Shown in pieces: positions 8,813 to 49,732 of a stretch of 64,000 bases of DNA (positions are counted from its first letter, which is position 1; the number at the start of each line of letters is the position of its first letter). Location: the NCBI RefSeq assembly GCF_037042905.1, contig NC_087246.1:12400001-12464000 (forward strand), in the 5' to 3' direction. Source of the DNA: Lytechinus pictus (taxonomy: Eukaryota). The notes under the pieces are model-generated. The model had not been told where the DNA came from and did not search any database. It worked only from the letters and a program-made list of their open reading frames with translations. The position numbers and the translations under genes are program-made.

Positions 8813-11800
8813 GGTTGTGCCAGTGACAATTTCTATATTCTTTACTTTTGGGCTTGGGGGGAATGTTGCCCCCCCCCCCCACAAAAAAAAACAAATGTTT
8901 CTCAATTTTTTTCTTTAAAGCCATCCATTTCATGCATAGTTTGATAGCAAGTTATTACCATCCTGCTTGAAAGTTGCCCTTGAATATAGCAAATGTAATT
9001 AAATAAGGATGGGATCGCATGTTTTAACTTTCCTTTCATTTTTGAAGGACATAAAACAGCAAATAGAAACATCATTGAATATTATGAACTCAGTTTTATA
9101 TTAACTTTAAAGGGATTCCTTGTAGATATAGTTAGGAAGTCAATGCATGTAACTTGTAGGATATTTGTTTGTTTTAACACAAGATGAAATGCTAGTTTGA
9201 CAGATTAAACATATCATGTATGTTTTCAAAATTATTTATTTATTTTCAAAGAAAATGCAGTTGGCGCATTTTGTTTGTAGAAAATTATATTTTTTAAATA
9301 AGAAATTATTAAAAGAATGAGGGTGATGTGTAATCCCACCATCATGTATTGACGTACAGAATAGCGTTGATCTATGTTGTATAGAATACTGAAGACAGAA
9401 CACCAAAGGATGAGAAACCAGACATAATGGAATCCCCAAAACTATCACGTTTCCTGGGAGTTGTAGAATTTAATATATGAAATTATCGATTGAGCTATTT
9501 CTATTGGCATAGACTTCCTGTCATTTTATATAAATCTTTGCTTTCAAATTAACTTTTTTTTTCATTTCACTCGATATCTATCCTCTTTCCATTACTCTTT
9601 GTCCATCTCTTTTTTTTTTTTATACTTTATTGAACTTTCTTCATTTTCATAGACACCCTGTTGCTCTCCCCCACCCCTCTCTCTCTTTCTCTATCTTTAT
9701 TGATTTTATTGATTCATCATGTTTGTCATTTTATGGAAGATTTTTCCATAGTTTCTCCCTGAACAGTGTGGACATGAGAAATGCAACCCCAGTTTCTGAT
9801 AATGCTGGTTTGCAATTAACTTGCCATTGCTGATATACCTCTTCAATAATCATTTACATCACAATATTTGTCTTCTTTGATTGAAAGGATGTCGTACAAG
9901 TAGTTGACCTTTATTTTAAGATGTTCGCTATCAATTTTAGTCAAACCACTTGTTTGATTTAGAAGTATACTCTACCTCATTGTTTGGAAACCTGCACTTT
10001 CATAGATGAAGGCATACCTGCTGTGTGATAAGCTTGTTAATATACCAGTAAACATATGAGTGAATATCTGGAGAGCAAAAGTAAATATGCACAATTTCAT
10101 GAATCAGGCCAACTAGACGCCATATCTAATTCTGAGGATGCTGTTCATGCTTCTCATAATGATGTCAATACTGTCTTTGAAAGGCTTGCCAATTAGGTAA
10201 AGTGCATCAATCAGATCCTGAAGCCTCAAAAGAGAAGGAGAGAATGATACTTGTACCGACTATAAAAATGAAGATTTTAAGGTTGCTCCATGCCTCCAAA
10301 GTGATTGGATGGCTACAATTTCCTTGCTTGGGGATTATAATTGTTTTATTGGAAGAAGGTATCACAAAGTATGTGAGAGGGATATGTGTGTATACATCAT
10401 TTCCTACCTGCAGGGAGGGCGTTACTGACATAGACTATTCAAAGCCTTCAGCCTTCTTGCAACAAAGACTCCAGCTGATCTGACATGGCTTGATTGTGCA
10501 TCACCTGTAAAATTTGATTAGCAAAGCAGCTTTTAAGCGTAGGGCTTGATCACATTGCATTCCTTTGGGATGTGCATTTAGATAGAAGTGAAAGGTTGGA
10601 AATGGGAAGGGACATCCTGTCTCTTTTGTGAGTTTGATCTCCCATTTCCAGATAGGGGAGTTTAACTAAAATTTTCTATAGGAGATTGCTGATATCTTAC
10701 CCAACACAAAGGCATTTTTTTTTTTCATTCTATGCAACTAGAAATCACCAGTTGAAAGCAAGCACATTGTAGGAACTGATATTATTGTTTTTTTTTTTAA
10801 GTTTCAACAAAGAAAACTCTGCAACATATTTTCTCTTTCTTTACTGTTTCTTCTGAAGCACATAGTGATGTATTTGATGTGTTATGCACTACATATAAAC
10901 ACACAGAATTGCTATAGATGGTATTTCCTATACCATTCAACATTTTGAAGTTTGATGTCTAAGGTATTTCATTACACGATTTCTGCTGCCTGTGTCTAAA
11001 AATGTTCATATGTTTCTAATTCAAGAATTCCAAGTTTGCCTTTTTGCTTTAGACTCCAAATAAAACATTAACGTTGTTAAGCTCTCCCCCCCCCCTCTTC
11101 CAACACCTCAGAAAGTGTGAACACACACGACTATGATAACATGATCTTTGTGTTTGTACACTCCTTCAGCCCTTGTATGTTATATTATACGAGCTTGCTA
11201 CCTTTACCATGTAATGTTTATCTCTCTCGAGGCTTTGTTTACAAGGTAGCTATTTGTGTCTGAATCTTGCCCCTTACGATATCTGAATATTTGTTCTCTT
11301 ACTCAATGTAGTCCTCAATCTATCCCTTTTTCCTATTCAGTTTTACAAGTGTGTTCACATAATATTCATTTCTAATATGTATAGTTATGCTGTCACTATG
11401 TTTCAATATTTTGTAACTGTTAAAATAATCTTAAAATCTTTCATCTCCTATGTTGGAATACAAATATACATTAATTTTGGCCTATGACTGACAGTGTCAT
11501 ACTTTTATCCACGTTTCACCTTCTTTTTTATTTCTTTCCCCCCCCCCCTTCTCAATTTTTCTCTTTCCTTCCCTGGTATTTGTAACTCAACACTTTTTTA
11601 CATTTTTTAATTTTTATTTCTGTACACCCATTTTCTTTTCTCTTTGTATTCTGTTTTATCTCCATGCATTATGTGATGAACAGTCATTGTCCATTTTTCA
11701 GAATAAATGTTTTATACTTCCATTCCTATGGTTGTCCATAGTCCACTCCCACCCTTTTTTATGACAAAGACCCATTTTGATTACCCCCACATACGTAGAT

Positions 11801-12260
11801 TTAAAAAAAGGGGGCTCAATTTCCTCCTTACAAAAGTCTTAGATCTGCCATTCTCTTCTTCATTCTCTCATCCCAATATAATTTTATGTCAAATATCCTC
11901 TCCCTCAATCTTTAAACTTATCATTTCTGTAGAATTAAACCTGATTTTTTTAAACTCTGTTTTAAAATCCTGGTTTTTATCTTTACATTTACCATTTTAG
12001 TATGTGACTATCACATCTTTTTGACAAAGTCCATTTTCATATTTGAACCAGTTTTGGGAGGTTTTATTTTCTTTTTTTTTTCATATCATATACTTTTTCT
12101 CCCTCATACTTATTTCCTGTAAAATATTTTCATCTTATACCTAAATTGTCACATAACATCATTTATTTTCTTTCATTATTTCTCATCTACAGTTTTCATC
12201 TGGTCTGATCTGGAATGCAGCAACTCTTCCCCACCAACACACACAAGTCTTCTGTGCTCT

Positions 12261-12367
12261 GATTGGACAGCCAGTATCATCCAAGTATCCTGATTGGCCA
12301 ATAATACCTCTGAGCCTGGAGCATATGCATACCAGAGCAATATCCAGCCTACAATTTCACTGCCAAT
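12261..12367 (+). promoter_or_regulatory. Cluster of CCAAT boxes upstream of the TPST coding region (candidate promoter)
   Basis: GATTGG 12261-12266, palindromic ATTGGCCAAT 12293-12302, CCAAT 12363-12367. Alternatively this is 5' UTR exon sequence after the acceptor-like TCTCATCTACAG ending at 12192. Confidence 0.3.
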
Positions 12368-13306
12368 AAATCCCGCCCTGCAATCAAATCTCCCCTTTCT
12401 GCTCAGATTCTCTTGACACTTTTAGGAAAAATAAGAAGGAAATGGCCCAGCTGTCCGTTTAGCCCCAATGCAAGGAGTCTGAAATGCGATCCTACCCTTG
12501 AGATAGGGATTGGCAAATGTCGCGTGGCCACCACGCTGGAGTATGAGTCGCTCAAAACATGAAGCAGCCAAAAGTTTCATTCAACTTGTAAAGGTCACAG
12601 GCTTGCAGCAACTGCGTGGATGAGGCTTGGATAAGACAGACGGCACGTTTTTGATCCTGGAAGAGTGTTACGCACAGAAAATATGCCCCTATTGATGAGG
12701 AGGTCGGGTAATGTGAGTCGACTTTGCAGGATTGATTGAATATAGCATCAGCAGCGACGAGAGGTGGATGCGTTCAGAGCTCTTCGTCATTGCTGCAAGC
12801 CATCTAGATAATCTTGTTAAAGATATTAATAAATTGAAAAGATAGAAGTAAAAGCAGAAAAAAGTATTGAAAATCTTTTGTGGAATTTCATTACCTACTT
12901 TCTGCATTTAACCTGGAGCCCTGAATTTGAGATGCAGACTTCATGAAGGATTGTGATGCCTCTAGGAGAAATTTCAAAATTTGATGTTATTTTAGTTATG
13001 GAAATTCTGATAAAGTGAAAGGAAGATTGTGCCAGAAGATAGCAAGGTAAAGGAGAGTACTTGAAATGATTATTATTAGGACGATTATCACTACTACAGA
13101 GAAAGCCCCTTGAAGACTGTCAATAGAGTAAATGTGATTTTCAACACACCACAGTAACCCCATAGGAGGATTGAAAATTTAATTAATTAATGGCTTGGTA
13201 TCGGAAGCATTTCAACTGAGAGTTAATTAGGTAAAGTAGAAGGATAAACAGAGAGATTGCCAATTTGATGTATAGTCCTCACCTTTTACGAATTATCAGT
13301 GTCACA

Positions 13307-36883: not shown

Positions 36884-37059
36884 NNNNNNNNNNNNNNNNN
36901 NNNNNNNNNNNNNNNNNNNNNNNNNNNNNNNNNNNNNNNNNNNNNNNNNNNNNNNNNNNNNNNNNNNNNNNNNNNNNNNNNNNNNNNNNNNNNNNNNNNN
37001 NNNNNNNNNNNNNNNNNNNNNNNNNNNNNNNNNNNNNNNNNNNNNNNNNNNNNNNNNNN
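36884..37059. other. Assembly gap (176 N)
   Basis: Run of N bases. Confidence 1.
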
Positions 37060-38824
37060 GATCACAAACTACTGTGTCTGATGAGAAGAAATTTGAAGAT
37101 GAAACCTAGAGGATGTTTCATGATGAAATCATGCAGCAAAACCAGAAGAGACACAAAAGAGAACTAATTATCAATTCTTCATCTACATTGGTACATTCAG
37201 TGCTGGATAAAGTACATTATATCTATAAAAATTGTAAGTAAGCCCCAAATCAATAATTTTTAATACTCGCCCATATACATGTATATGACATTCGAAACTC
37301 CATTTTACCAGCTTGTCAAGAAAATATGAACCCAACAAAAAAAAATGAAGTTATGATACAATGATTTATTAAAAAACAATATAAAACACTAAATATTGTA
37401 AAAGTTATGGGCTGCAACTCCCCATCAAAAAAGGGTAACTGTATACTATTATTCATATGAAAACAAACTATGCTTGTATCGTGTTTCTATTATAAAACAT
37501 GGATTTTGTTGAATAAAAAAAGTGACGCATAATTCTCTGATATAATTTACAAAGAGGAAGCAATATATCAACTTCCTGATAATACTGCGAACAATACCCA
37601 ATATATCATTTCAATATTATTATATAGGCCTATTATACCAGGAATATAAGTGAAGTGTGAAAACTGATAGGTATATTCGCCGACAAGTCTTCAAACTTTT
37701 TATCTACATCCTTTTCACCTTTGTACCTCACTATCTCACTTAACCTGTAATGCGGAGTGGTCGTTTCCCCAGTTCATATTCTAAAGTTTATCCAAACAAG
37801 ATTGAAGAATAAAATCGTGATTGATTAATTTATTACCCATAAAATACATGCTATATGATGACTTTACTATTTTTAATGCATATCTCTAAATGAATTGACA
37901 TGATGTCAACTAAACAAATGTTAAAATGATTAACAGAAAGTGTAAAGTGTCTTTTTCTTCTTCTTCTTCTTTTTTTTTTGGGGGGGGGGGCGGGTCGTCC
38001 CCATTCCAGGTGTCCTACCAATCTGCCATCAAAGCCTGCACAAGGACATTATTTGAATAGTCAAAATACATCAATGACAACGGAGACAAACATTGTTGTT
38101 CAATTCATGCTCGAATTGAGTTTCAAGTTGAGTAACCTTTAACAATTGAATTATTCACATGCACAACGATATCCCTATATAATCAGGATTGTAGACCGAT
38201 CAATTTATGAGTTAGACCCCCTTTTGTCAACTTACAGGAAGGTGGGCCCGGGAGGTGGGCATACATTATTTAATGTGTGCTACCACGCCATTTAGATTGG
38301 TCGTATATTTTTAATGTGAACGAGTTACTCTCCAGACGCAAAGTCATTCGCAGTGATAAAGACAAGAATGAGCTGTATGTAATAGAGTGTGCGTTCAAGA
38401 ATCAATGAAGAATAGGTTCCTCAGAGAGCTCTCAATCAGGCTGTACTGAATTCATCTGAATTTGGCATGTAAGTAAAATATATCTTCTCTATTTGTACAT
38501 TTAGCAAATTCGAGGAAACTTTGAGAATATATATCAAAAAATCATAAAGCAAAATTAAATGTAGAACCTTTTTACAACTTGAGGAGAAACTGTAGACAAG
38601 ATACAGATTTTATAACTAAGAACGTCGCTTAGGCGACGACCAATTGTAGCTCATAAATATGCAGTATACAAACCCCTACTTTGGCAGAATGTCAAAGGCC
38701 AAATTAAAATATATATATATTTTGTTTTTTAAAAATGGTGATAAATGTTTTTTATATTTTGAATCCAGTGTTATTATGAAGAACATATTTCTACTTTTAT
38801 TATTAGTTTGGCTTAGGACTCACA

Positions 38825-39361
38825 ATGGAGTCAAACTCGAATCAGCAAATAGGTGGTCAACCATCACTACCAAAACCAGAACCTCAGGACCAGACATCAT
38901 CAATACCTCAAAACAAACCATCATCCCCACCACCACCGCCACCATCATCATCTTCATCTTCATCATCACCATTAAGCAAACCAACATTATCACCACCTGC
39001 ACCACCACCATCAACATCATCATCACCACCACCATCAACGTCACTTTCTAAATCATCACCTCCAACTGCACAATCACAACAACAAATCAAGGTTTCGTCC
39101 CCACCAACACCACCACCAACAAAAACCTCTCCATCACCACCACCACCAGCACCATCATCATCACCACCATCATCATCAACTGCACCATGGATGGATGTCA
39201 AGCTCCAGTGGATCCTCATCATCTCTCATTGGATGTTAGTGTTTGGACCTGTTGTATTCATCAAGATGATAATGATAGCGGCCATCTCCTACTTTGCCTT
39301 TACCATCCTCACTACCAAACGCACAATGGATTCACTGTCAAAGATGTTCAAAGATGATAAG
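38825..39361 (+). CDS. GGR-like gene coding exon 1 (Pro/Ser-rich region plus hydrophobic segment)
   Basis: ACAATGG start; open frame through (CCA/TCA)n; 38-aa hydrophobic stretch at 39203-39316; phase-0 donor AAG|GTGGGT at 39362 joins in frame to 40746. Alternative start at 39191. Confidence 0.7.
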
Positions 39362-42300
39362 GTGGGTGACAGATACCCAAATTGGTGTCTTGGGGATAGT
39401 GAATATGATTGATTGCAAAACTTCATTTTACACTCTCATCTGTTTTAAGTAATTTTTTATCACTTTGCATTTCTGCAACATGATATAGTGTAATATGGTT
39501 ATGGTGTGTGTGTGTGTGGGGGGGGGGTGTAATGGATGTCCCATTTGTTAACTGATGGCAGTATTGAGTGCATGTGGGTGTGTGTGGGGTGAGGGGAGGG
39601 GGCAAATACTGTAAATGCGAATCATAATGATGATATGAAATTGATTTTCTTTCAGCAACAATTTTGTTAAATCAAAATGTACTGAAATCATTCCTCGTTA
39701 GGGTGGGTTAAGATTAAAAAATGATATATTTTCATTTTGAAAATTGATAAGTCAATTAGACTGATTTTAGTTTGAATATGTTTCCAGTTTTACTGTGAAT
39801 TTGACGTAATTCAATAGACAATAATTCATGAAATATCATTTGTCAATTAATCAATCTAGATGTATACCATTTTTCAAACTGGATAACTGGATTGTAAAAA
39901 TTAGTTTACTCCAGGGGGCCGTTTCATAAAGCTGTTCGTAAGTTAAGAGCGACTTTAAGAACGACTGGTGATCCTTTCTTGCGCGCTAAACCATTGCCAA
40001 TGGTATATACCATTTACTAAAAGAAAGGATCACCAGTCGTTCTTAAAGTCGCTCTTATCTTACGAACAGCTTTATGAAACACCCACCTGAAATAAAAGTG
40101 TTGAATGAATAAAAAGACCTGATTAATAGTATGTAAGAAGAACTGATTATTGTTTATCATTACTGATATGTGCTTTCTTTTAATTTCTTCATAAATCTAA
40201 AAGAAAATTGTGCAAGGTGTATTGTATTCCCTCATAATAATTTACATTTTCACTGATGATATGATACATGGCAAAAGAATAGTACAGAAAGAAGTAATCA
40301 GAAATGTGATAAATTTTATTTTCCTCTAAGCATTGGACAGAAATAGAATGATGGTAACGATGAGTGAGGTGGAAGTGGTAGTGGTGGTGGTGGTGATGGG
40401 GATGATGAGGATGATGATGTCATTAATTATTATCATGATGGTGGTGGAGGTGATGGTGTTGGTGTTGGAGGTGGTGATGATGTTGGAGGTGGTGATGATG
40501 GTATTGATGACTATTTATGTGGGTAGATGTGTTGGTAATGATAATGAGGGTAATGATTGTTGTAATGGTGATGACGGATGATGATGATGGTTGTGATAAT
40601 GGTGCTAGGATGATGATCTGATATTGAGGACGAGGATGATGATAATGATGGTATCAACAATTAAGAAGAAGGTGATGACTAAGAACTTTATGTTGAAAAA
40701 TCTAATTGACTCATACCCTCATTTCTTCACTACTTGAATTTACAGGGTACCAAGAAGGCCCACTATGATGTCGCTATCGTTGGAGCTGGTCCAGCTGGGT
40801 CTACCCTGGCTTATTACCTGGCAAAGTCTGGTCGGAAGGTTCTACTCTTGGAAAAGAAAAAGTTCCCCCGAGACAAATATTGTGGCGATGCAGTCTGTAA
40901 GACAGCGGTAGAGATACTGATGGATATGGGTATCTATGACGATCTTATAAACCAGAAAAAGGCCCATGTGGTAAGAAAATTTGAGGATTTAGTATAATAA
41001 ATGAAATCATATTAAAAATTCATGCAAATCTACTTTCCCTCCCAAGTATAAAATCAAACAATATTAATTTTTTTTTCCACAAAAAGTGCCCCCGTTTTAT
41101 TTTTAGTCTGATTGTCAGTGGTATAAACATAAAATGTTATTATATGTATATAACCTAACTTTATTCATTGGTAAACATAACTTATTGACCTATGACCGTA
41201 TTTATATAATCACTTATTATAATTTCAGTAGAAGTAGTATTAGTAGCAGTCTTAATAGCAGCAGCAGCAATTGCAATAGCAACATCAATAGTAATAGTAA
41301 TAGTACTACAGTGCGTCCCAAAAAAAACTATACACTTTTGAAATGGCTGCCAAATAAAAGATTTAGCACTTTGGGGGAAAAGACTTATAGATATGGAAAG
41401 CCAATATAGTCATCTTTCAAATGACACAAAAAAGTTGAAAAACTATTTATGCTTGAGCGAGTACTGCCCATTAAAACAAAGGGTATGAAAATTAGGGTGG
41501 GCCGGAATTAGCCTTCCAATTTCTTTCAGGTTTTTTTGTTTGATACTTGCAAAGTTGAGGGTTATTTGGTGAATAAAAGATCAGATGTGATCAGATTGTT
41601 GTTTGTGAAAATGTAATGCATTATTAAATTGAAATGTAATGCATGAGTGATCATGAATTGCAATTTTTAGTGCAGTATTTTGTCTTTATCATGTGGATCT
41701 CAACAATGTGTTCATGACAGTCAGAAGAGGGGGGTAATATGACTTACATGTAGGTAGGTGAAGTACGTCGATGGTATAAAGGTCAACAGAACATTTAGCA
41801 ACCCCTCCCTCCATCTCTACCCCCTTCCCCCACTTCTTGAGAGACTAAGCTTGTCTAGGCTGGGCAGGAATTAGCCTTACAGTTTTTTGAGAGGTTAGTC
41901 CTTTGGAACTTACAAAGCTAAGGGTGTTCTGCTATTTATGAGTGAGATAAGGTTTGGTTTTTAGGCAAATTTCACGAGTTACTAAATTGAAATGTTATGC
42001 ATGAGTGAACAGGAATTGTAATTTTAGTGTAGCATATTCATCTTGTGGGCCTCAGAAGTGTATTCGTGAGAGTCAGATTAATGTGATGGTACATGTTACA
42101 AGCAACAGGCCGAGATATGCTAACTTGCTAAGACTTGGTTAAAAGGGCATTCCTCTTCATTTTGTCCTTTTACAAATTAAAAGTCATATGTACCCTCCCC
42201 TCTCCACCTCCATTTCCCAGCCCCCCTCTCTCTCTTTCTCTGTATCATTTCCTGGATTGTAGCCTATTCAAAACTTAACTGCCAAGTGACCGGTGGCTGA

Positions 42301-45300
42301 TGGTCAGTTTTTTTTATTTAATGATTACCAAGAAATTTAATGATTATGGTGATTAATGAAGTAATTTATTGAAAAAAACGAATGTTTGATTGGTCACATT
42401 GCACATTGAATGAGTTGATTTACTGATAAATTGTTGATTAAATGATTGATAGGAAAAAGTTGATGCCCCAATTCAGAATTAATCATGAAATCAACATTCT
42501 GCTCTGGACTTCACGTGTACATGACAATAGCCATCAGTCTCTCAACAGGAGGGGAGGGCGGGAAAGATGGAGGGGACGGGGGCTGAATGTTCCGTTGACC
42601 CTTGTTCCATCAACCTACTTCTCCCACTTAAGTCCTATCTCACCCCCTATTCTTCCGACTCCCATGAACACATTGCTGATATCCACATGATAAAGTTGAA
42701 ATGCTGCCCCAAAAGAGATCCAAATGATAAAGTTGAAATGCTGCCCAAAAAGTGTAATTTATGTTCACTCATGCATTAAAGTTCAATTTAATAATTTAAA
42801 AAAATTGCTTAAGCAACCAAAACTGGTCACGGTTGATCATTAATTTATCACAACGCCCTTAACTTTGCAAGTTCGAAAGGATTTGCCTCTCAAATACTGA
42901 CATAAGTTGGAAGGCTAATTCCAGCCCACCCTAATTTTCATACCCTTTGTTTCAGTGGGCAGTGCTCGCTCAAGCATGAATAGTTTTCCAACTTTTTGGT
43001 GTTATTTGAAAGTTGACTTTATTGGCTTTCCATATATGTAAGTCTTTTCCCCCAAAGTGCTACATTTTTTATTTGCCAGCCATTTCAAAAGTGTATAGTT
43101 TTTTTTGGGACGCACTGTAGTGTGGTAAACCTAATTGCATGAACAGCAGTAGTATACTAATGTCGTTGATATCATTACCTTTTCCCAACAGGCAGACAGT
43201 GGAGGTCTTGTTAGCCCTGGTGGTTTGAGCTTCATAGGGCGGAGTCTTGAGATCATGGGTGATATCCCAGCAGCCATTGCATGTAAGAGACTCCATCTTG
43301 ACAATGCTATTGCCATGGCAGCTAAAAAGTGAGTTCACAACCTCTGGTTTCATTAAAATTATTATTGACAATATATTCAATAAATCTATTCACATTTCCA
43401 TTAGCTATTTAAGTGACATGATTTAGTAGCTTGGAGCCTGTTGTTGATAATAGTAATTATCGAGCAGCCACCATGCAATACAGATCTCTAACCAATTTTT
43501 CTCCACATAATTAAATATGCACGGTTAAGATTTGTTTACTTAAAAATAAGAGGGTATCTTCCTTAATACATATATATTTATCAGTGTTGATGTGCATGTG
43601 TACATATTTCAAAATTCTCAAAAATTAAAAACTTAAAGATGACAAAAAGAACATAATTACTAATATCCAGTTTCTAAATTGTCACTGTGATACACATTTG
43701 AAACTGATTGAATGTAAAGCTACAGGTCCCCTAAATAAAATATACTAATTATTTATAAAGTGACAATTTTTACGTTTTAATTTTGTATATGCATATGTCT
43801 GGGAAAAGACTGTTCTTTACAACCAGGGGGGGGGGGGGCGTTTCATCAACATTTTCGTCCGACAAGTTGTCAGATCTGACAACTTTCCTTGATAATGATT
43901 GGCTGGGAGTCACTGTTACCATAGTAAATGTCGGATAAAACAGTACTTGTCGGATAAAACGTCCGACAAGTCCTTTCATGAAACGCTCCCCTGAAAGGTT
44001 ATTAGTAACATGACTTGCTAAGCAACAAGTGATGTGTGCAAACTAATTCAAATTAGTTACTAAATTAATTAATTGAATTATGTTATGTTTTCATAGCGAA
44101 AATCTGAGTACTTAATTCACATGGTAAAAAGTATATGGGAGGACAAATTTCCAGAATTCTATATAAAATAATAGTTCTACATCTCATTTAGATAGCCACG
44201 TTGCATTTGATATGCACCATACAGAACATTACCCAAGTGAATACAACATTGCTGAAGATTTATTGCTTCAGTTTTCCCACTGAGAATGGAATCCACGACC
44301 CGAACTAGTCACCTCTATAGTATGTTTGCTAGTTAACCTGACATAAAGATCCTGATTTATTCCCTTTTCCCCCAGAGCCGGGGCGGATTTGAAGGAGAAC
44401 AGTTCCGTATCGGCTGCTACCCTTGATAAATCAACAGGACTGTGGACCATGTTTCTGGAGGGTGGGGAGCAGCAGACCTACCAGGCACGTGTTCTAGCCT
44501 GCTGCGATGGTGCCCCGTCCACCATGGCTACCAAGCTAGGTATCATTGATACCCCACCCCAGGGATCATGCTCTAGGGCGTATGTAGAGCCGGGGACCCA
44601 CAGGTTTAAGGCTGATGGTGTGGTGATTTATAACAAAGACATGCTCCCAGGTAATGAAATTTCTTCCAATGTTATAAACTCTGTTTACGAAGAGAGATAA
44701 ATATATGTTATACAGTGCTTGGAACAGCAGTTACTAGATGACTGTACACACGATGATCATCATCCTTAGTGATTGTTGCATATATTACTAATCGATGTGT
44801 AGTCATAGAGGTACCATATTATATGCTGTGGATATTTTCTGCAGATATCAACATGTTGTAAATCATATTGTAAAGGACGTTCTTTCAATTGAATTTTATC
44901 AGCCTTTACAGTCACTCCATATTTCAGTGGTAACTTTACATGTGCTTGATTAATACTCTTCTAAGAATATGGCATTTGGATTAGGTTAAACTCTACTTTA
45001 AATTATCCTGTTTTATGTTAAAAGAAATAAAAAATACAATATTGTGAATAAATGTAGTATTGTAATTTATTTGATTTATGAGCAGTAAGTAAAATAATCT
45101 TTTACATCTTGCAGGATATTCTGCCCTATTCCGCCATCCAAACAACGAGCTTAATTACTGTGTCTACATAATCCCTGGTAATCCTCAAATTGGCAATGAT
45201 GACCTACCCTATTGGCATGACAACATCATGAAAAATGATCCCTATGTCAGCAGGGCACTAGGGGACAAGGCTAAAGTGGAAAGGATGAAAGTTGGTAGGT

Positions 45301-48300
45301 ATTTAAGATAATATGAATATGAATATCCGAAGGTTAGTTTAATGTAATATCTCTAAACTTTACATCTGCACTCTCTGGACTACAATGCCATCATCTTTGT
45401 TCTGCAAATTTAAGAAATAGAGGGATGGAAAAGTTTAAAACACATCAAGCTAGAGGAGAAACAAAATACCGTAAAAGTCTATTTATGCAAAAATTATCAT
45501 TCATCTGGGCTTGAAAAGTTCTTTTTGCTACTGATCATTAAATAAATCATGTAATTTTTAATAACTTTTTTTATTTATTATTTTCTTCAATAACTAAGGT
45601 AAACATATATATTTTGCAATAGCTTGTAAAAGAAGAATTATGAAAAGGGCCTTGGAATAAAAAAAAAATTACTGGTTCATTGTTCCTACACCTGTGCAGA
45701 TCTTCTATAAAGAAATAAATTTTGCAATTGAAAAATTGTCACGCACTGTAGTAGAAATACTGATTAACATTGGGATAAACAAAGTGTTGCAACTATCAGG
45801 CAAAATTTCCAAGAAATTGTGCCAATAGACGGTAAAGAGCTTATGCTTGGTATGTTTTTTATTGGTAAATGACGTACGTAGCTATTATGTGGAGTGATCT
45901 ATATTCATCTCTATTATGTAAACTGATCATGTGTTAATTTTCTTGCTGGTACGAGTTAAATGTTTAATCATCTCATGTTACAGCTAGTCTGCGTTTTGGT
46001 GGTGTACCGCGTTCCTATGGCAACCAGGTAATTCTTGTCGGAGATGCAGCTGGCATGATTGACCCTATGACAGGTATGTAACCTTATTAAAAGTATGCAC
46101 ATATTCTTAGAATAGCATGAGATCTTTAAGACCTCAAATATGAACTGAAGATCTTTCCTTCCCAGATGCTTTGTAATTAAAATTTGACAAATTATGGGAG
46201 CTGGCACCTTTGAATACCTCATACAGATTAAATACTTTACACTCGACTCTTTTCCTTAACCCTATTTGATTTTCTCTAATTTCTTTTACTTTGATGTTCT
46301 TTATTCTCTCCTTTTCCCTTTCTCTCTCCTCCTCCAACCTGCATCTGCCTTTCTGACGTTTTTTGACTCTCTTATCAATCTCTCTCTCTTTCTCTCTCTG
46401 AAGCTAATTAAAGACCTGTATTATCAAAGACCTGTCCATGTTCCTTATTCTAGCTCCTTTATATGAAGAAATGTGAATTATTTTAACAAAATCAGCTTGC
46501 TCTTGTAACATAAAACAATTATTCTGTAAAGTTATTCTATCATTCAATGAACACAAATATTCCTTAAAAAGGAATTTAATATGGAACTCCAAGTTCAGTA
46601 CTAAATGCTGATCACATTTTTTAATGAAATGATTTGATCCCTTCTCATAATCCATATAACTGCATGGTTAAGTATAGGGGAATGATTACCATCTGAGCTC
46701 TCTCAGGCTCACACAGTAATATCAAATGAAAAATACTTATAATCAAGACCACTTTACATAGAACCTAACATGTAAAATGAAATAAAAGAGAAAAGCCCTA
46801 AAAAGTGACATCTCAACTAGAATTCCCTTACACCATCCAAGAATATGATTTTAATTATTCATGAACTGATTTTGATCTAATCAATTTATCATGTCCCAAA
46901 GGGGAAGGAATCCATCTTGCCATGGATGGCGGACGCTTAGCGGCAATGTTCTTGGAGGAGGCCCTCGCTCATGGGAACGTGTCCAGGGAGGCTATGGAGA
47001 TCTATCATCAGCGCTGGATGGATAAGTTTGGACACGATTTCAAATGGTGAGAAATCACTGTTGCTATGGTAACTAGTTGAATAATGTGAAAACTGGACTT
47101 CAGGAAAATATGCATGCACACATACAGAGCCATTAGCAGCACTCCATGTGAGGAGAATGCACATACATGTGATACAATGTAAATAACATGATTGAAGGGA
47201 ACCTTCTGGGCCGTGTGAAATAAAGAAATACAATCACTTTTATTATTGAGTATAACTGTGTAGAAAAGTTACAATCACTTTTATATATTAATTGTATCTC
47301 TGTATGTTTGTATGTTATACTCTTAAGTTCTGGGGAGGGTAACAACTATTTTGTTTTTACGCTTTCACAATTTTTCTTGTCATTTATGAATCATATAAAA
47401 ATATTAAGTTCTACTGAAATATGATTATCCTTTGAATTCATTTGTACTGAACTAAGGGGGGGTGGACCAAACTTTCAAACCAAATTCATTTGTGGTTCCT
47501 AAATCTTTGTTTCTGTCTGCAGCTCCAGTATATTTATTGGAAAGTGAGTGAATTCAATCATACCTAAATCCTCCACGGAACAACATTGCTTTTGTGTTCA
47601 GCTCATCTTCTGTACGCAAATACTTGGAAAAAAGTTTTTAAAAGCATGAATATCACCTGACCAGATTTAATATTACCCTAAGTACCTGTAGTTTTGTGTA
47701 GCTTCCCCCGGACATTCTTGAAGAGTGCAGGATTTCTTATCAATTACTGTCACATGTAAAATTTTATCATTCTATAATAGGTCATCATATATTAGTCAAC
47801 TTCAATATAAGTTCCCAATATTACTGGATGCAGCAACAGCAGGTATTCAACGTAAAGGTAACTAATCTCTTACCCTATTATGTCATTTCTGCTGTTTGTA
47901 ATTATAGTATGAAATTGTATTTGGAAAGCTGGACTTGCAATTTTCAAAGAGAACATTCACGCTCAGGCAAGCTGAGGAAATCATCCAAGATCAGATATGG
48001 ATTGTTTTCTTGCTTGAAAAGTCCAGATTTATGATTCCCTACTTTCCTTGACTACAGTGTATATCTTCCATGGTGATTCGAAAGTAGAATTGGTTTATTG
48101 TACACGATGTGACAGGATCCAGTACAACATGGCACTGGTTGTTAAGAAATGAGTTTCAGGTGTCCTTAGTAAGAATGTCTCATTGCTTTGATTTTCTTGT
48201 TTACTGAATTCTTTATTTGATATTCCATTTCATAAACCTCCAGCCAATAATAATTGTTGACTATCTCTACAATCTAGGAAAATAAAAAGTTTCGTTAAAA

Positions 48301-48664
48301 GAACCATGTTTTCTAGTGGATCGGGACGATGTTCCCCTCAAGGCAAGTAAAAGACAATATTATGTAACTAAATAACTCTTCTAAAATATCAAAGACAACA
48401 TACAACTAACATTTTCCTTTTTAATTCCTCAGCATGACATCTTAAAGACAGTCATCCTTTTGTATTAATTCCTTTTCAGGTGATTCTTTCATGGCCAAAT
48501 GGGCGGACATCATGACCGGTCGAGTGCCAAAGGTCAACCTACTTAGACCGGAGTTTGTTATTGTTGTTGGCTTTGAACTTGCTTGCCTCCTGTCTCAGCG
48601 ATTACTTGGGTTTGAATCAGGAGATACAAGTCAGGAGCATGAAGCAAGGCAAAAGGAAGAGTGA
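38825..48664 (+). CDS. Geranylgeranyl-reductase-family FAD-dependent oxidoreductase, 616 aa; join(38825..39361,40746..40970,43192..43328,44376..44650,45115..45294,45984..46073,46902..47046,47781..47857,48480..48664)
   Basis: All eight introns are GT-AG with matching phases; total 1851 nt = 617 codons. Motifs: DVAIVGAGPAGS (GxGxxG), LLEKKKFPRDKYCGDAV, RLHLDNAIAMAAKKAGA, CCDGAPS, LVGDAAGMIDPMTGEGIHLAM. I recall similar invertebrate proteins being auto-annotated as conditioned medium factor receptor 1-like (Dictyostelium CmfB); unverified. Confidence 0.9.
39912..40089. mobile_element. Palindromic MITE (second copy at 61386-61549)
   Basis: GTTTCATAAAGCTGTTCGTAAG...AGAGCGACTTTAAGAACGACTGGTGATCCTTTCTT and its inverted copy ending TTTATGAAACACCCACCTG. 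Confidence 0.8.
40345..40680. repeat. (GAT/GGT)n compound microsatellite in GGR-like intron 1
   Basis: GGTGGTGATGATG runs. Confidence 0.85.
40746..40970 (+). CDS. GGR-like coding exon 2 (FAD-binding Rossmann motif)
   Basis: TTTACAG|GGT; GTKKAHYDVAIVGAGPAGSTLAYYLAKSGRKVLLLEKKKFPRDKYCGDAVC...KAHV; donor GTAAGA at 40971. Confidence 0.95.
41309..43117 (+). mobile_element. 1.8-kb non-autonomous Tc1/mariner-like element, copy A (GGR-like intron 2)
   Basis: CAGTGCGTCCCAAAAAAAACTATACACTTTTGAAATGGCTG ends, ~210-bp imperfect TIRs, TA on both flanks (41307-41308, 43118-43119); inserted at the end of an (AGT/AGC)n tract; no transposase ORF. Confidence 0.9.
43192..43328 (+). CDS. GGR-like coding exon 3
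   Basis: CCCAACAG|GCA; ADSGGLVSPGGLSFIGRSLEIMGDIPAAIACKRLHLDNAIAMAAK; donor GTGAGT at 43329, phase 2. Confidence 0.9.
43824..43993. mobile_element. Short MITE in GGR-like intron 3
   Basis: CAGGGG...GCGTTTCATCAA / TTCATGAAACGCTCCCCTG ends; internal TCCGACA/TGTCGGA repeats. Confidence 0.7.
44376..44650 (+). CDS. GGR-like coding exon 4
   Basis: CCCCCAG|A; AGADLKENS...ARVLACCDGAPSTMATKLG...KDMLP; donor GTAATG at 44651, phase 1. Confidence 0.92.
45115..45294 (+). CDS. GGR-like coding exon 5
   Basis: CTTGCAG|GA; GYSALFRHPNNELNYCVYIIPGNP...KAKVERMKV; donor GTAGGT at 45295. Confidence 0.88.
45984..46073 (+). CDS. GGR-like coding exon 6 (GD motif)
   Basis: TTACAG|CT; ASLRFGGVPRSYGNQVILVGDAAGMIDPMT; donor GTATGT at 46074. 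Confidence 0.93.
46902..47046 (+). CDS. GGR-like coding exon 7
   Basis: CCCAAAG|GG; GEGIHLAMDGGRLAAMFLEEALAHGNVSREAMEIYHQRWMDKFGHDFK; donor GTGAGA at 47047. Confidence 0.92.
47781..47857 (+). CDS. GGR-like coding exon 8
   Basis: TAATAG|G; WSSYISQLQYKFPILLDAATAGIQRK; donor GTAACT at 47858; phases fit both neighbours. Confidence 0.8.
48480..48664 (+). CDS. GGR-like coding exon 9 (last)
   Basis: CCTTTTCAG|GT; GDSFMAKWADIMTGRVPKVNLLRPEFVIVVGFELACLLSQRLLGF...QKEE, TGA at 48662-48664; AATAAA at 48770 and 49346. Confidence 0.85.
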
Positions 48665-49732
48665 CAAAAACAATCATGAACAGTCAAGAGGAAAATATAT
48701 TTTGATATTCTATGATTATTTAAGATATATGATAAAATCACTGTGGAAACAAGAAGTTATGCCCAATGAAATAAAGTCAATCATACCCTTGCCAAATTTC
48801 GTAATTGAGATGTACATGAACAATTATCTTGTCCCGATTTATGTTTAGAAGATGAATATGACATGATTATCGAAGCTTAGATAGCTTAACAAAAAAAATG
48901 TCTGTTGCCTAATATAATAGCTTCACAGCTTATTGGGTTTCACTGCGATTTTTTTGTATTCCTAATTGGTTTGTCTATGCATTAATGGTAGGATTACAAA
49001 GGAAAAGATGCTGAGTGGGTTCCTGATCAAATTTGGCTTGGAGTTTTACTTCTTGTTATATCATCTTTTTTTAAACTATTTTTTCCCTAACCATTTTCAA
49101 ACAATCGATAGTAATGACCAAATTGCTTTTCAATTATCTGTAATTGCAGGAACCAAAAATTCAATATAGATGAACACATTCTTCTTATCAAACATATTTT
49201 TATACATATTTGATACTACTATTTTCATACTACTTTGAACATTCGGTATAGTTTGATGAAACACTCCAAGTTGTAATTACTCTCGAATCACAGAGGCAAT
49301 TAATATTCATTTTCAAATTTTTTTAGACTTTGTTGATGGAAACAAAATAAATGTTTAAATCAGAAAAATTAAAGTAGAGCTCATTTTTTTTGTCTCAAAT
49401 ATTGATGCTGCTGACTGATTTAGAATAGATTTCTGAAAAAGGATGGACGGTTAATCACAAAGGAAAGAAATTTTATTCTATTCCTTATACTATTTACATT
49501 CTCATACATGTTGAAGATGGAGGGTGAACCTAGAATTAAGTCTGGAGTTAAACCTAGGTTTAATTATGAAGATTCAACACATTCTGAAAGAAGGATGTTA
49601 TTACACTCTTACATTGTAAGTGGAGTAAGCATAAGTTATGGTTTAGAAAGTCTTTAAAACTATATATATAACCAGAGAATATATGTGAGAATGTCACCAA
49701 AAATGAATTGGTATTGTCAACCTCACTCTCTA

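What the first reader, a model, noticed from the sequence alone, without database searches (positions are those of the whole stretch)
38825..48664. Intron-rich animal gene encoding a geranylgeranyl-reductase-family flavoenzyme: candidate unknown isoprenoid/lipid-saturation pathway
Seen: nine phase-consistent exons give an intact 616-aa protein with GAGPAG, FPRDKYCGDAV, RxxLDxxIxxxAxxAGA, DG and GDAAGxxDPxTGEGI motifs; the ORF track shows only three unconnected fragments. Established: this motif set defines the GGR family (plant and cyanobacterial ChlP, archaeal digeranylgeranylglycerophospholipid reductase, mycobacterial MenJ), which saturates prenyl double bonds; the Cys of the KxCG motif lies next to FAD and is retained here. 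I know of no human ortholog and no characterised animal member. Inference: this animal has an uncharacterised prenyl/lipid reductase (possible substrates include prenylquinone side chains, dietary algal isoprenoids, polyprenols or pigment/saponin intermediates), from ancient eukaryotic inheritance or old horizontal transfer. Eight introns exclude contamination. I recall Dictyostelium CmfB (CMFR1, described as a receptor) as a relative, so the family may be mis-annotated as a receptor.
Basis: partly seen in the sequence, partly recalled or inferred. Interest (0 to 1): 0.8.

Follow-up and report, generated by a model that had tools for sequence, protein, structure and literature searches.

The report
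Sea-urchin CMFR1-like membrane flavin reductase
This is a real, spliced and transcribed sea-urchin gene for a membrane-anchored flavin enzyme that databases label a "receptor"; it belongs to an odd branch of the prenyl-reductase superfamily, and its bacterial cousins sit inside sterol-synthesis gene clusters, so it may saturate a sterol side chain.

Summary
Nine GT-AG exons (38825-48664, + strand) give an intact 616-aa protein. RNA contigs and stranded reads confirm six junctions exactly; orthologue colinearity supports the other two.

The gene is not unannotated. It is 95% identical to Lytechinus pictus "conditioned medium factor receptor 1-like" and is the orthologue of Dictyostelium CMFR1/cmfB.

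The family just passes the geranylgeranyl-reductase superfamily model (162.2 bits, cutoff 158.8) but fails every characterised equivalog (MenJ, ChlP, archaeal DGGR). It keeps the FAD motifs and the catalytic Cys. The GGR fingerprint YxWxFP...GxG is replaced clade-wide by YxA[LI]FRH...NYCxYIIP.

Two things are new here. In at least five bacterial lineages, members of the same clade sit inside sterol-synthesis clusters (oxidosqualene cyclase, CYP51, ERG4/24, EBP/ERG2, sterol methyltransferase). Other bacterial members are fused to a P450-reductase-like diflavin module.

My best reading (about 0.45) is an ER-anchored, CPR-fed FAD reductase that saturates a C=C bond of a sterol side chain. A classical prenyl-chain reductase (0.25) is the main rival.

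A GGR-family sterol C-24 reductase (Bsr) is published for bacteria and was stated to be absent from eukaryotes. I found no assay of any eukaryotic member. The substrate remains inferred.

The parts
38825..39361 (+). Exon 1 (aa 1-179). Start ATG at 38825. Pro/Ser-rich low-complexity extension (aa 1-120, 38825-39184), also present in the Lytechinus pictus orthologue but absent or much shorter in S. purpuratus and Diadema. Hydrophobic membrane anchor aa 127-164 (39203-39316).
40746..40970 (+). Exon 2 (aa 180-254). FAD dinucleotide-binding GAGPAG (40782-40799) and FPRDKYCGD with the invariant Cys225 (codon 40881-40883).
   Evidence: (TIGR02032 positions 1-57, 74.8 bits)
43192..43328 (+). Exon 3 (aa 255-299). 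GGLVSPGG strand and the start of the RxxxD...GA motif.
   Evidence: (junction 43328>44376)
44376..44650 (+). Exon 4 (aa 300-391). DG motif (44506-44511).
45115..45294 (+). Exon 5 (aa 392-451). Clade-specific YSALFRHPNNELNYCVYIIP (45117-45176), which replaces the GGR fingerprint YxWxFPx7-8GxG.
45984..46073 (+). Exon 6 (aa 452-481). First half of GDAAGMIDPMTG.
46902..47046 (+). Exon 7 (aa 482-529). EGI of the GD motif and the start of the helical C-terminal domain.
47781..47857 (+). Exon 8 (aa 530-555). WSSYISQLQYKFPILLDAATAGIQRK helix. The acceptor was corrected from 47796 to 47781.
48480..48664 (+). Exon 9 (aa 556-616 plus stop). C-terminal hydrophobic helix aa 576-600 (48539-48613).

Best explanation
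The gene encodes the sea-urchin orthologue of the CMFR1/cmfB family. The protein is a flavoenzyme held in a membrane by an N-terminal hydrophobic hairpin and a C-terminal hydrophobic helix, and its catalytic domain is a divergent branch of the geranylgeranyl-reductase (GGR) superfamily.

Shown: the gene is real, spliced and transcribed. The FAD-binding motifs and the GGR catalytic Cys are invariant across the clade.

Inferred: bound FAD is reduced by an external NADPH-dependent diflavin reductase (the ER cytochrome-P450 reductase in eukaryotes), not by direct pyridine-nucleotide binding. Reduced FAD, together with Cys225, then saturates a carbon-carbon double bond of a membrane isoprenoid.

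The most likely substrate class is a sterol, and within it the isoprenoid side chain (delta-24, delta-24(28) or delta-25(27)). In an alga-grazing animal that could be an endogenous intermediate or a dietary algal sterol. The clade-wide replacement of the flavin-facing Trp of YxWxFP by Ala, and of GxG by CxY, fits a pocket reshaped for a substrate other than a linear prenyl chain.
For: Gene and transcript.

Orthology to Dictyostelium CMFR1 and to RefSeq 'CMFR1-like' proteins.

GGR-superfamily placement: TIGR02032 is the best family for every member tested (155.6-173.8 bits) and MenJ is the next best in six of the seven (BchP-ChlP in the Dictyostelium protein). After CMFR1, the top 30 Swiss-Prot structural neighbours are named GGR-family proteins (DGGR, MenJ, BchP) plus one uncharacterised archaeal protein.

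Catalytic Cys: 40/40 in the clade and 30/30 in ordinary GGRs. DPxTGEGI is kept. There is no conserved halogenase Lys.

Tree: the clade is monophyletic, with SH-aLRT 100 in both trees and a stem of 2.05 in the tree. It contains eukaryotes from several supergroups plus a few bacterial groups.

Sterol context of the bacterial members:
- L002/L158/L090/L084: AKR-EBP-ERG4/24-[gene]-TPR-3bHSD-P450-Rieske(VanA_C)-cyclase. The L002 P450 is CYP51 (6mcw, 1.7e-112) and the L002 cyclase is an oxidosqualene cyclase (1w6k 426.8 bits against SHC 156).
- L001: P450, Rieske, EBP, Rieske/KshA_C, [gene], with ERG4/24 overlapping its stop codon.
- L094: OSC, CYP51, radical SAM, sterol methyltransferase divergently adjacent to [gene], Rieske, second methyltransferase, ERG4/24, ERG2.
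- In total, 10 of 11 metagenomic loci at about 56% identity or more to L002 with usable flanks carry specific sterol genes.

Electron supply: L003, L004 and P0096 are fusions of [gene] with Flavodoxin_1, FAD_binding_1 and NAD_binding_1.

Precedent: a GGR-family protein, Bsr, is an assayed sterol C-24 reductase in Myxococcota (PMC12004948).

Membrane anchors. AF2 model pLDDT 94.7.
Against: No enzyme assay exists for any member of this clade, so substrate and even reaction direction are inferred.

The sterol context belongs to only one bacterial subgroup. It is not resolved as the specific sister of the eukaryotes (a polytomy). Other bacterial subgroups with long flanks show no sterol genes.

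Identity between the animal protein and the sterol-cluster proteins is only about 46%.

The GGR substrate-positioning fingerprint, which Bsr keeps, is lost here, so the mechanism may differ.

I did not check whether this genome encodes the canonical delta-24 reductase DHCR24. If it does, as animals generally do (my general knowledge), an endogenous delta-24 role would be redundant.

Dictyostelium CMFR1 was isolated as a CMF-binding protein and is detectable at the cell surface by biotinylation (PMC3937094). That does not fit a purely ER enzyme.

The CPR fusion would equally suit an oxygenase.
Confidence: 0.45

Rival explanations
1. It is a classical prenyl-chain reductase. It would saturate double bonds of a linear isoprenoid such as a quinone side chain, a polyprenol or dolichol precursor, geranylgeranyl or phytyl groups, or dietary algal isoprenoids.
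For: GG-red-SF is the best-scoring family, and MenJ is the best equivalog for six of the seven members tested, including all four animal proteins. Apart from CMFR1 itself and one uncharacterised archaeal protein, the top 30 Swiss-Prot structural neighbours are all prenyl reductases. The catalytic Cys and FAD motifs are invariant. Several bacterial subgroups of the clade have no sterol genes nearby.
Against: The YxWxFP...GxG fingerprint that positions linear prenyl chains is absent: W in 0/40 clade members against 30/30 ordinary GGRs. Scores are far below every equivalog cutoff, for example MenJ 107-113 against 700. The only informative genomic contexts are sterol clusters.
Confidence: 0.25
2. 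It is not a reductase but an oxygen-using flavoenzyme, either a monooxygenase/epoxidase fed by CPR like squalene monooxygenase or a halogenase-like enzyme, acting on a lipid.
For: The family profile matches pyrrole halogenase PltA (172.9 bits) as well as it matches archaeal GGR 3oz2 (170.9). Foldseek PDB top hits mix FixC, Mpy16, PltA and GGR. The C-terminal helices align with Mpy16 and PltA. Fusion to a CPR-like module is typical of oxygenase systems.
Against: There is no conserved Lys at the halogenase catalytic position, no WxWxIP, and the motif is DPxTGEGI rather than the halogenase FxDPxxSxG. The invariant Cys is a GGR feature that the aligned halogenases and FixC lack. Squalene monooxygenase scores only 51 bits.
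Confidence: 0.12
3. It is what its name says: a cell-surface receptor, or receptor subunit, for a secreted density-sensing factor, with the flavoenzyme fold retained only as a scaffold.
For: Dictyostelium CMFR1 is cited in the literature as a CMF receptor with knock-out phenotypes, and it was detected among biotinylated surface proteins (PMC3937094). The sea-urchin protein is its orthologue.
Against: Every FAD-binding and catalytic residue is invariant across animals, algae, amoebae, diatoms and bacteria. That indicates selection on catalysis. Bacteria embed the gene in sterol clusters or fuse it to a reductase. The receptor name in animals is transferred by homology alone.
Confidence: 0.05

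Closest known systems
Dictyostelium discoideum CMFR1 / cmfB (UniProt Q9U641)
   Same: It is the orthologue: 46% identity over 471 residues and TM 0.84 between models. It has the same N-terminal hydrophobic segment plus GGR-like domain, and it falls in the same clade.
   Different: It is described only as a receptor for conditioned-medium factor, and no enzymatic activity has been reported. The Lytechinus protein adds a 120-aa Pro/Ser-rich N-terminus.
Bsr, bacterial sterol C-24 reductase of Myxococcota (Lee & Welander 2025, PMC12004948)
   Same: It is a GGR-superfamily flavoprotein with the catalytic Cys. It was found through co-location with sterol genes, and it reduces the delta-24 bond of zymosterol and desmosterol. 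It is the best functional analogy.
   Different: Bsr keeps YxWxFP, groups with MenJ, and is reported as absent from eukaryotes. The clade here has lost that fingerprint. I could not obtain a Bsr sequence to place in my trees.
Archaeal digeranylgeranylglycerophospholipid reductases (Sulfolobus SaGGR 3atq, Thermoplasma 3oz2) and mycobacterial MenJ
   Same: They share the fold (TM 0.6-0.65), GxGxxG, (K/R)xCG[DE], the DG motif and GDAAGxxDPxTGxGI.
   Different: Identity is 20-25%. They are soluble or peripheral, without the terminal membrane anchors, and they have YxWxFPx7-8GxG. HMM cutoffs for these equivalogs are missed by several hundred bits.
Pyrrole halogenases PltA / Mpy16 / Bmp2
   Same: Profile and fold similarity equal that to the GGRs, including the C-terminal helices.
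   Different: The catalytic Lys, WxWxIP and FxDPxxSxG motifs are absent here, and the halogenases lack the Cys.
Squalene monooxygenase (SQLE/ERG1)
   Same: It is an ER-anchored group-A-like flavoprotein of sterol metabolism that takes electrons from cytochrome-P450 reductase. That is the electron route suggested here by the bacterial CPR fusions (the SQLE property is established knowledge).
   Different: It is only distantly related (51 bits), it is an oxygenase, and it has no GGR Cys.

Membership tests
Geranylgeranyl-reductase superfamily (NCBIfam TIGR02032 GG-red-SF) | Whole-protein HMM score at or above the curated cutoff (158.8 bits) | tested here: met
   The 95%-identical L. pictus orthologue and the S. 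purpuratus protein each score 162.2, Saccoglossus 161.4 and amphioxus 173.8. Dictyostelium falls just below at 155.6. The window's exons hit colinear parts of the model. The pass is marginal.
Geranylgeranyl-reductase superfamily | N-terminal GxGxxG FAD fold and the GDAAGxxDPxTGxGI motif | tested here: met
   GAGPAG and GDAAGMIDPMTGEGI are present and invariant in 40/40 clade members.
Geranylgeranyl-reductase superfamily | Catalytic Cys beside the flavin (Cys47 of SaGGR) in a (K/R)xCG[DE] motif | tested here: met
   Cys225 in FPRDKYCGD is C in 40/40 clade members and 30/30 ordinary GGRs. It aligns to the RCGEG Cys of 3oz2.
Geranylgeranyl-reductase superfamily | YxWxFPx7-8GxG substrate-positioning fingerprint | tested here: not met
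   The window has YSALFRHPNNELNYCVY. Clade-wide, W is replaced by A (W in 0/40 against 30/30), P by R/K (39/40), and GxG by [CG]xY (second Gly to Tyr in 39/40). Only Y and F are kept.
Geranylgeranyl-reductase superfamily | FAD-dependent saturation of isoprenoid C=C bonds | not testable with these tools
   No assay of any clade member was found in the literature.
Characterised equivalogs: MenJ (NF045655), ChlP/BchP (TIGR02028/TIGR02023), DGGGPL reductase (NF041080) | HMM score at or above the equivalog cutoff | tested here: not met
   For the four animal proteins tested: MenJ 106-113 against 700, BchP-ChlP 93-102 against 343, ChlP 53-63 against 505, DGGGPL reductase 59-71 against 580.
Bsr (bacterial GGR-type sterol C-24 reductase) | Gene sits in sterol-biosynthesis clusters | tested here: inconclusive
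   This is met for one bacterial subgroup of the same clade, covering at least five lineages. It is not applicable to the intron-bearing animal gene and is absent in other bacterial subgroups.
Bsr (bacterial GGR-type sterol C-24 reductase) | Retains YxWxFP and groups with MenJ in the Bsr clade | tested here: not met
   The motif is lost. Clade placement relative to true Bsr was not tested, because no Bsr sequence could be fetched. The Archangium/Cystobacter homologue I retrieved lies beside chemotaxis genes and is probably not Bsr.
Flavin-dependent halogenases | Conserved catalytic Lys, WxWxIP and FxDPxxSxG motifs | tested here: not met
   The aligned positions are H/V with no conserved K. The motifs here are A[LI]FRHP and DPxTGEG.
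CMFR1/cmfB orthogroup | Full-length orthology to Dictyostelium CMFR1 with the N-terminal membrane segment | tested here: met
CMFR1/cmfB orthogroup | Binds conditioned-medium factor and acts as a receptor | not testable with these tools
   This is known only from Dictyostelium work cited in PMC3937094.

The most novel reading that the evidence does not exclude
The CMFR1-like proteins are a eukaryote-wide family of CPR-dependent sterol side-chain reductases that has gone unrecognised because it was named as a receptor. On this reading they are the eukaryotic counterpart of bacterial Bsr. They would also be a candidate for the unassigned delta-25(27)/delta-24 reduction step in green algae and amoebae, and in alga-grazing invertebrates for converting dietary algal sterols. 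The family would be inherited from, or shared with, sterol-producing bacteria.
Probability: 0.3. Interest if true: 0.8.

Novelty: new variant of a known kind. Interest (0 to 1): 0.6.

Why it matters
Sterol side-chain reduction in eukaryotes is credited to DHCR24/DWF1 and ERG4-type enzymes. A GGR-type sterol reductase was described only in 2025, in bacteria, and was reported as absent from eukaryotes.

If this family does the same kind of chemistry, four things follow:
- It adds a third, flavin-based route to eukaryotic sterol metabolism.
- It gives a candidate gene for side-chain reductions for which the algal and amoebal sterol papers I read name no gene.
- It could explain how marine grazers handle algal sterols.
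- It would bear on the debate about bacterial contributions to eukaryotic sterol synthesis and on reading sterane biomarkers.

It would also correct a receptor annotation that has been propagated to dozens of animal genomes, and it would prompt a re-reading of the Dictyostelium cmfB phenotype. Even if the substrate is not a sterol, the family is a conserved flavoenzyme with no enzymatic function assigned that vertebrates appear to lack.

Tried and rejected
- My first exon-8 acceptor (47796, 611 aa) was rejected by the orthologue alignment and by RNA.
- Pfam on single exons gave only generic FAD-fold hits.
- I tried to obtain a true Bsr sequence by searching with the Archangium homologue L027. 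The Cystobacter fuscus member of that family lies beside chemotaxis genes, so I did not use it as Bsr.
- The nearest outgroup, L036 (Methylococcaceae), is a GGR::epimerase fusion with signalling neighbours and a long branch, and is uninformative.
- Contexts of the non-sterol bacterial subgroups were uninformative: DUF1523, an amine-oxidase-like flavoprotein, a sulfotransferase, MCP/HAMP and SpoIIE.
- The halogenase reading was considered because PDB sequence hits are led by Mpy16 and PltA. I rejected it as the main reading on motif grounds.
- A squalene-epoxidase role in the clusters was considered. It is disfavoured by the Cys motif and the weak SQLE similarity, but it is not excluded, because no canonical epoxidase was seen in the flanks examined.
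- Rfam found nothing in 38000-49500.
- Earlier scan notes held nothing on this gene.
- The first attempt at the metagenome scan failed because the machine was busy.
- The J Lipid Res 2012 delta-25(27) paper is not held in the library.

Full report
**1. The observation**

The plain ORF list shows only exon-sized pieces on the + strand between 38.8 and 48.7 kb. A three-frame scan finds nine open blocks that carry recognisable flavoprotein sequence.

Joining the blocks at canonical sites gives these exons: 38825-39361, 40746-40970, 43192-43328, 44376-44650, 45115-45294, 45984-46073, 46902-47046, 47781-47857 and 48480-48664. All introns are GT..AG and are preceded by pyrimidine tracts.

My first guess for the exon-8 acceptor (47796) was five codons short. 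Orthologues have WSSYIS at that point, and RNA settles the acceptor at 47781.

Transcriptome contigs of 1.5-1.6 kb from two runs of the same species, laid on 43100-48700, skip exactly 43328>44376, 44650>45115, 45294>45984, 46073>46902, 47046>47781 and 47857>48480. The few raw reads from two stranded libraries all have the first mate on the minus strand, as expected for a + strand mRNA. Depth is confined to the exons, apart from an unrelated repeat in intron 3.

The first two junctions lie outside the 6-kb stretch I was allowed to lay. They rest on gap-free alignment with five orthologues.

**2. What the gene is**

A search with exon 2 returned full-length relatives. The spliced model aligns end to end with them.

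- The closest is Lytechinus pictus 'conditioned medium factor receptor 1-like', 607 aa, 95% identical over the whole length.
- Next come S. purpuratus 'conditioned medium factor receptor 1' (87%), Diadema (78%), amphioxus (70%), and hemichordates and molluscs (60-65%).

So the gene is already annotated in public records, under a name transferred from Dictyostelium. The AlphaFold2 model of the orthologue's residues 115-607 is confident (pLDDT 94.7). Its best match among reviewed proteins is Dictyostelium CMFR1 itself (Q9U641; E 1e-59, TM 0.84, 46% identity). The rest of the top 30 are archaeal digeranylgeranylglycerophospholipid reductases, MenJ, BchP and one uncharacterised archaeal protein, at TM 0.58-0.65.

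Named hits come from echinoids, cephalochordates, hemichordates, many molluscs, a bryozoan, a sponge, an ichthyosporean, Amoebozoa, green algae, a red alga, a diatom, a gregarine and other protists. No vertebrate, tunicate, arthropod or nematode protein appears among hits that score above the algal ones. That agrees with 'no human orthologue', but it is not an exhaustive test.

**3. Family membership, tested feature by feature**

*HMM scores.* Against NCBIfam, full-length members hit TIGR02032 (GG-red-SF) best, at 155.6-173.8 bits against a cutoff of 158.8. The near-identical L. pictus protein scores 162.2. This is a marginal pass. MenJ, ChlP/BchP and DGGGPL-reductase models score 50-113 bits against cutoffs of 343-700.

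*PDB comparisons.* By sequence and by profile, pyrrole halogenases (PltA 172.9 bits; Mpy16) tie with the Thermoplasma GGR 3oz2 (170.9), and FixC follows. Foldseek cannot separate them either. I therefore compared residues in an alignment of 40 clade members and 30 ordinary GGR-family proteins.

*Shared by both sets, invariant or nearly so:*
- GxGPxG
- FPR[DE]KxCGD, with the Cys in 70/70
- RxxxD
- DG
- GDAAGxxDPxTGEGI

*Different in this clade:*
- Ordinary GGRs read Y-x-W-[IV]-F-[PG]...N-V-G-x-G, with W and the first G in 30/30.
- This clade reads Y-x-A-[LI]-F-[RK]-H...N-[YLF]-[CG]-x-Y-I-I-P, with W in 0/40, plus an invariant Pro and a GG pair at 258-259.

*Halogenase marks:* none is present. 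There is no conserved Lys where PltA has KK, no WxWxIP, and the motif is DPxTGEG rather than FxDPxxSxG.

The protein is therefore a member of the GGR superfamily by score and by catalytic residues. It belongs to a distinct branch that has replaced the motif which positions the prenyl chain over the flavin. It is not a member of any characterised equivalog.

Hydropathy shows a 38-residue hydrophobic stretch (aa 127-164, with a central Gly-Pro) and a C-terminal hydrophobic helix (aa 576-600) flanking the catalytic domain. The first 120 residues are Pro/Ser-rich low complexity. The Lytechinus pictus orthologue shares this extension; it is absent from the S. purpuratus protein and much shorter in Diadema.

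**4. Relatives elsewhere and their surroundings**

In one genome per prokaryotic species, only four loci encode close relatives (42-47% identity, full length). The rest are about 30%-identical GGR-family proteins, mostly from Actinomycetota, with Micrarchaeota and others.

Trees place all eukaryotic sequences and these few bacterial ones in one clade (SH-aLRT 100 in both trees; stem length 2.05 in the tree). Animals group with the sponge and the ichthyosporean. This fits vertical descent in Holozoa with later losses, although Balamuthia sits oddly inside that group.

The bacterial members gave two leads.

*Lead 1: fusion to a reductase.* The Rhodocyclaceae proteins (L003, L004) and P0096 are about 1,080-1,100 aa fusions of this domain to Flavodoxin_1, FAD_binding_1 and NAD_binding_1, the architecture of cytochrome-P450 reductase. 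That group nests beside diatom sequences. I read the fusion as a Rosetta-stone hint that the flavin of this enzyme is reduced by a CPR-type partner.

*Lead 2: sterol gene clusters.*
- The Rokubacteria-type locus L002 and its metagenomic relatives L084, L090 and L158 have this order: aldo-keto reductase, EBP, ERG4/ERG24, this gene, a TPR protein, 3-beta-HSD, P450, Rieske/VanA_C, cyclase.
- The L002 P450 is CYP51 (best PDB hit Methylococcus CYP51, 1.7e-112). The L002 cyclase is an oxidosqualene cyclase (lanosterol synthase 426.8 bits against squalene-hopene cyclase 156).
- In the alphaproteobacterial locus L001, the gene lies among a P450, two Rieske oxygenases, EBP and an amine-oxidase-type flavoprotein. 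Its stop codon overlaps the start of an ERG4/ERG24 gene.
- A metagenome scan seeded with these proteins returned 80 loci. Of the 11 loci with about 56% identity or more to L002 and usable flanks, 10 carry ERG4/24, EBP, CYP51-like or OSC genes. These 10 fall into at least five sequence and GC groups. None of the roughly dozen lower-identity loci with long flanks does.
- In the 538-kb contig behind L094, the gene is divergently adjacent to a sterol methyltransferase (Sterol_MT_C). A Rieske oxygenase and a second methyltransferase follow it. OSC, CYP51, a radical-SAM gene, ERG4/24 and ERG2 are in the same 16 kb.

*Limits of the context evidence.* In the larger tree the sterol-linked sequences form one subgroup of a bacterial group. 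That group sits in an unresolved three-way split with the eukaryotes and another bacterial group that has no informative context. The link to sterols is real for that subgroup. It is extrapolated to the eukaryotes.

**5. Literature**

Full-text searches found CMFR1 only in Dictyostelium signalling papers. There it is treated as a plasma-membrane receptor, a cmfB- strain exists, and the protein was recovered among biotinylated surface proteins. No paper links it to GGRs or assays an animal member.

Lee & Welander (2025, PMC12004948) showed that a GGR-family protein, Bsr, found through its place in a myxobacterial sterol cluster, reduces zymosterol and desmosterol at C-24 in lysates. They state that Bsr keeps YxWxFP and the Cys, groups with MenJ, and occurs only in sterol-producing bacteria, not in eukaryotes.

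Brown et al. (2023, PMC10070321) describe bacterial sterol clusters with methyltransferases. Their main text contains no mention of FAD and only one, unrelated, mention of a reductase.

Work from the Nes laboratory describes a delta-25(27)-olefin route in green algae and Acanthamoeba. In the algal pathway tables I read, side-chain reduction is assigned only to an ERG4/24 homologue, which is missing in one Chlorella.

**6. Mechanism proposed**

*Shown:* an intact, expressed, membrane-anchored protein with every FAD-binding residue and the GGR Cys conserved.

*Inferred:*
- Electrons flow NADPH > CPR-type diflavin reductase > enzyme FAD. Hydride and proton are then delivered to a C=C bond, with Cys225 assisting as proposed for SaGGR.
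- The substrate is a membrane isoprenoid, most probably a sterol side chain. The Trp-to-Ala and GxG-to-CxY changes would reshape the pocket at the flavin.
- In a grazing sea urchin the substrate could be a dietary algal sterol.

I put this reading at about 0.45. A classical prenyl-chain reductase gets 0.25, an oxygenase or halogenase-like chemistry 0.12, and a true receptor 0.05. The remainder is unassigned.

**7. Novelty and verdict**

The gene and its GGR-like fold are already in databases, so the bare observation is not new. What appears to be undescribed is threefold:
- the clade-defining loss of the GGR fingerprint;
- the repeated embedding of bacterial members in sterol clusters;
- the CPR fusions.

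Together these turn a 'receptor-like' annotation into a testable sterol-reductase hypothesis, for a family present in many invertebrates and protists that did not turn up in any vertebrate in my searches. I class it as a new variant of a known kind and give it an interest of 0.6.

Noticed in passing
window 43833-43995 (intron 3 of the gene): A roughly 160-bp element with terminal inverted repeats (GGGG(A/C)GCGTTTCAT...CGTCCGACAAGT at both ends, in opposite orientation). RNA contigs and reads cover it on both strands at enormous depth (word depth about 35,000 against about 15 for the exons), with many variant letters and loose ends. It looks like a very high-copy MITE-like repeat carried in many transcripts. 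There is only one copy in this window.
   Followed up: partly
window 38825-39184: The first 120 codons are Pro/Ser-rich low complexity (37 P and 37 S). The region is open in several frames on both strands, which produces spurious His-rich and Gly/Asp-rich ORFs in the ORF list. The extension is shared with L. pictus but is absent or much shorter in S. purpuratus and Diadema.
   Followed up: partly
L003:1735-5046, L004:985-4242, P0096 (L087:1762-4992): Bacterial (Rhodocyclaceae MAG) natural fusions of the CMFR1-like flavoprotein to a complete cytochrome-P450-reductase-like module. They are self-sufficient enzymes that would be convenient for assays. In the tree they nest next to diatom sequences, which suggests transfer between eukaryotes and bacteria.
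   Followed up: partly
L094:7274-8917 and 8892-13294: In a 538-kb metagenomic contig, a DUF4070 radical-SAM gene, a sterol C-24 methyltransferase, a Rieske/KshA-like oxygenase and a second methyltransferase surround the CMFR1-like gene. OSC, CYP51, ERG4/24 and ERG2 lie nearby. This may be a bacterial pathway for side-chain-alkylated sterols, and it includes an ABC/FtsX/HlyD exporter.
   Followed up: partly
L036:7914-10589: A Methylococcaceae MAG encodes an 891-aa fusion of a GGR-family domain to an NAD-dependent epimerase/dehydratase (SDR) domain. It sits on a long branch just outside the CMFR1-like clade, and its function is unknown.
   Followed up: no
trees: The Balamuthia mandrillaris protein groups inside or next to the animal/ichthyosporean clade rather than with other Amoebozoa. 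This may reflect transfer, contamination or a tree artefact.
   Followed up: no
window 36884-37059: A run of 176 N (assembly gap or masked stretch) lies 1.8 kb upstream of the start codon. I left it untouched.
   Followed up: no
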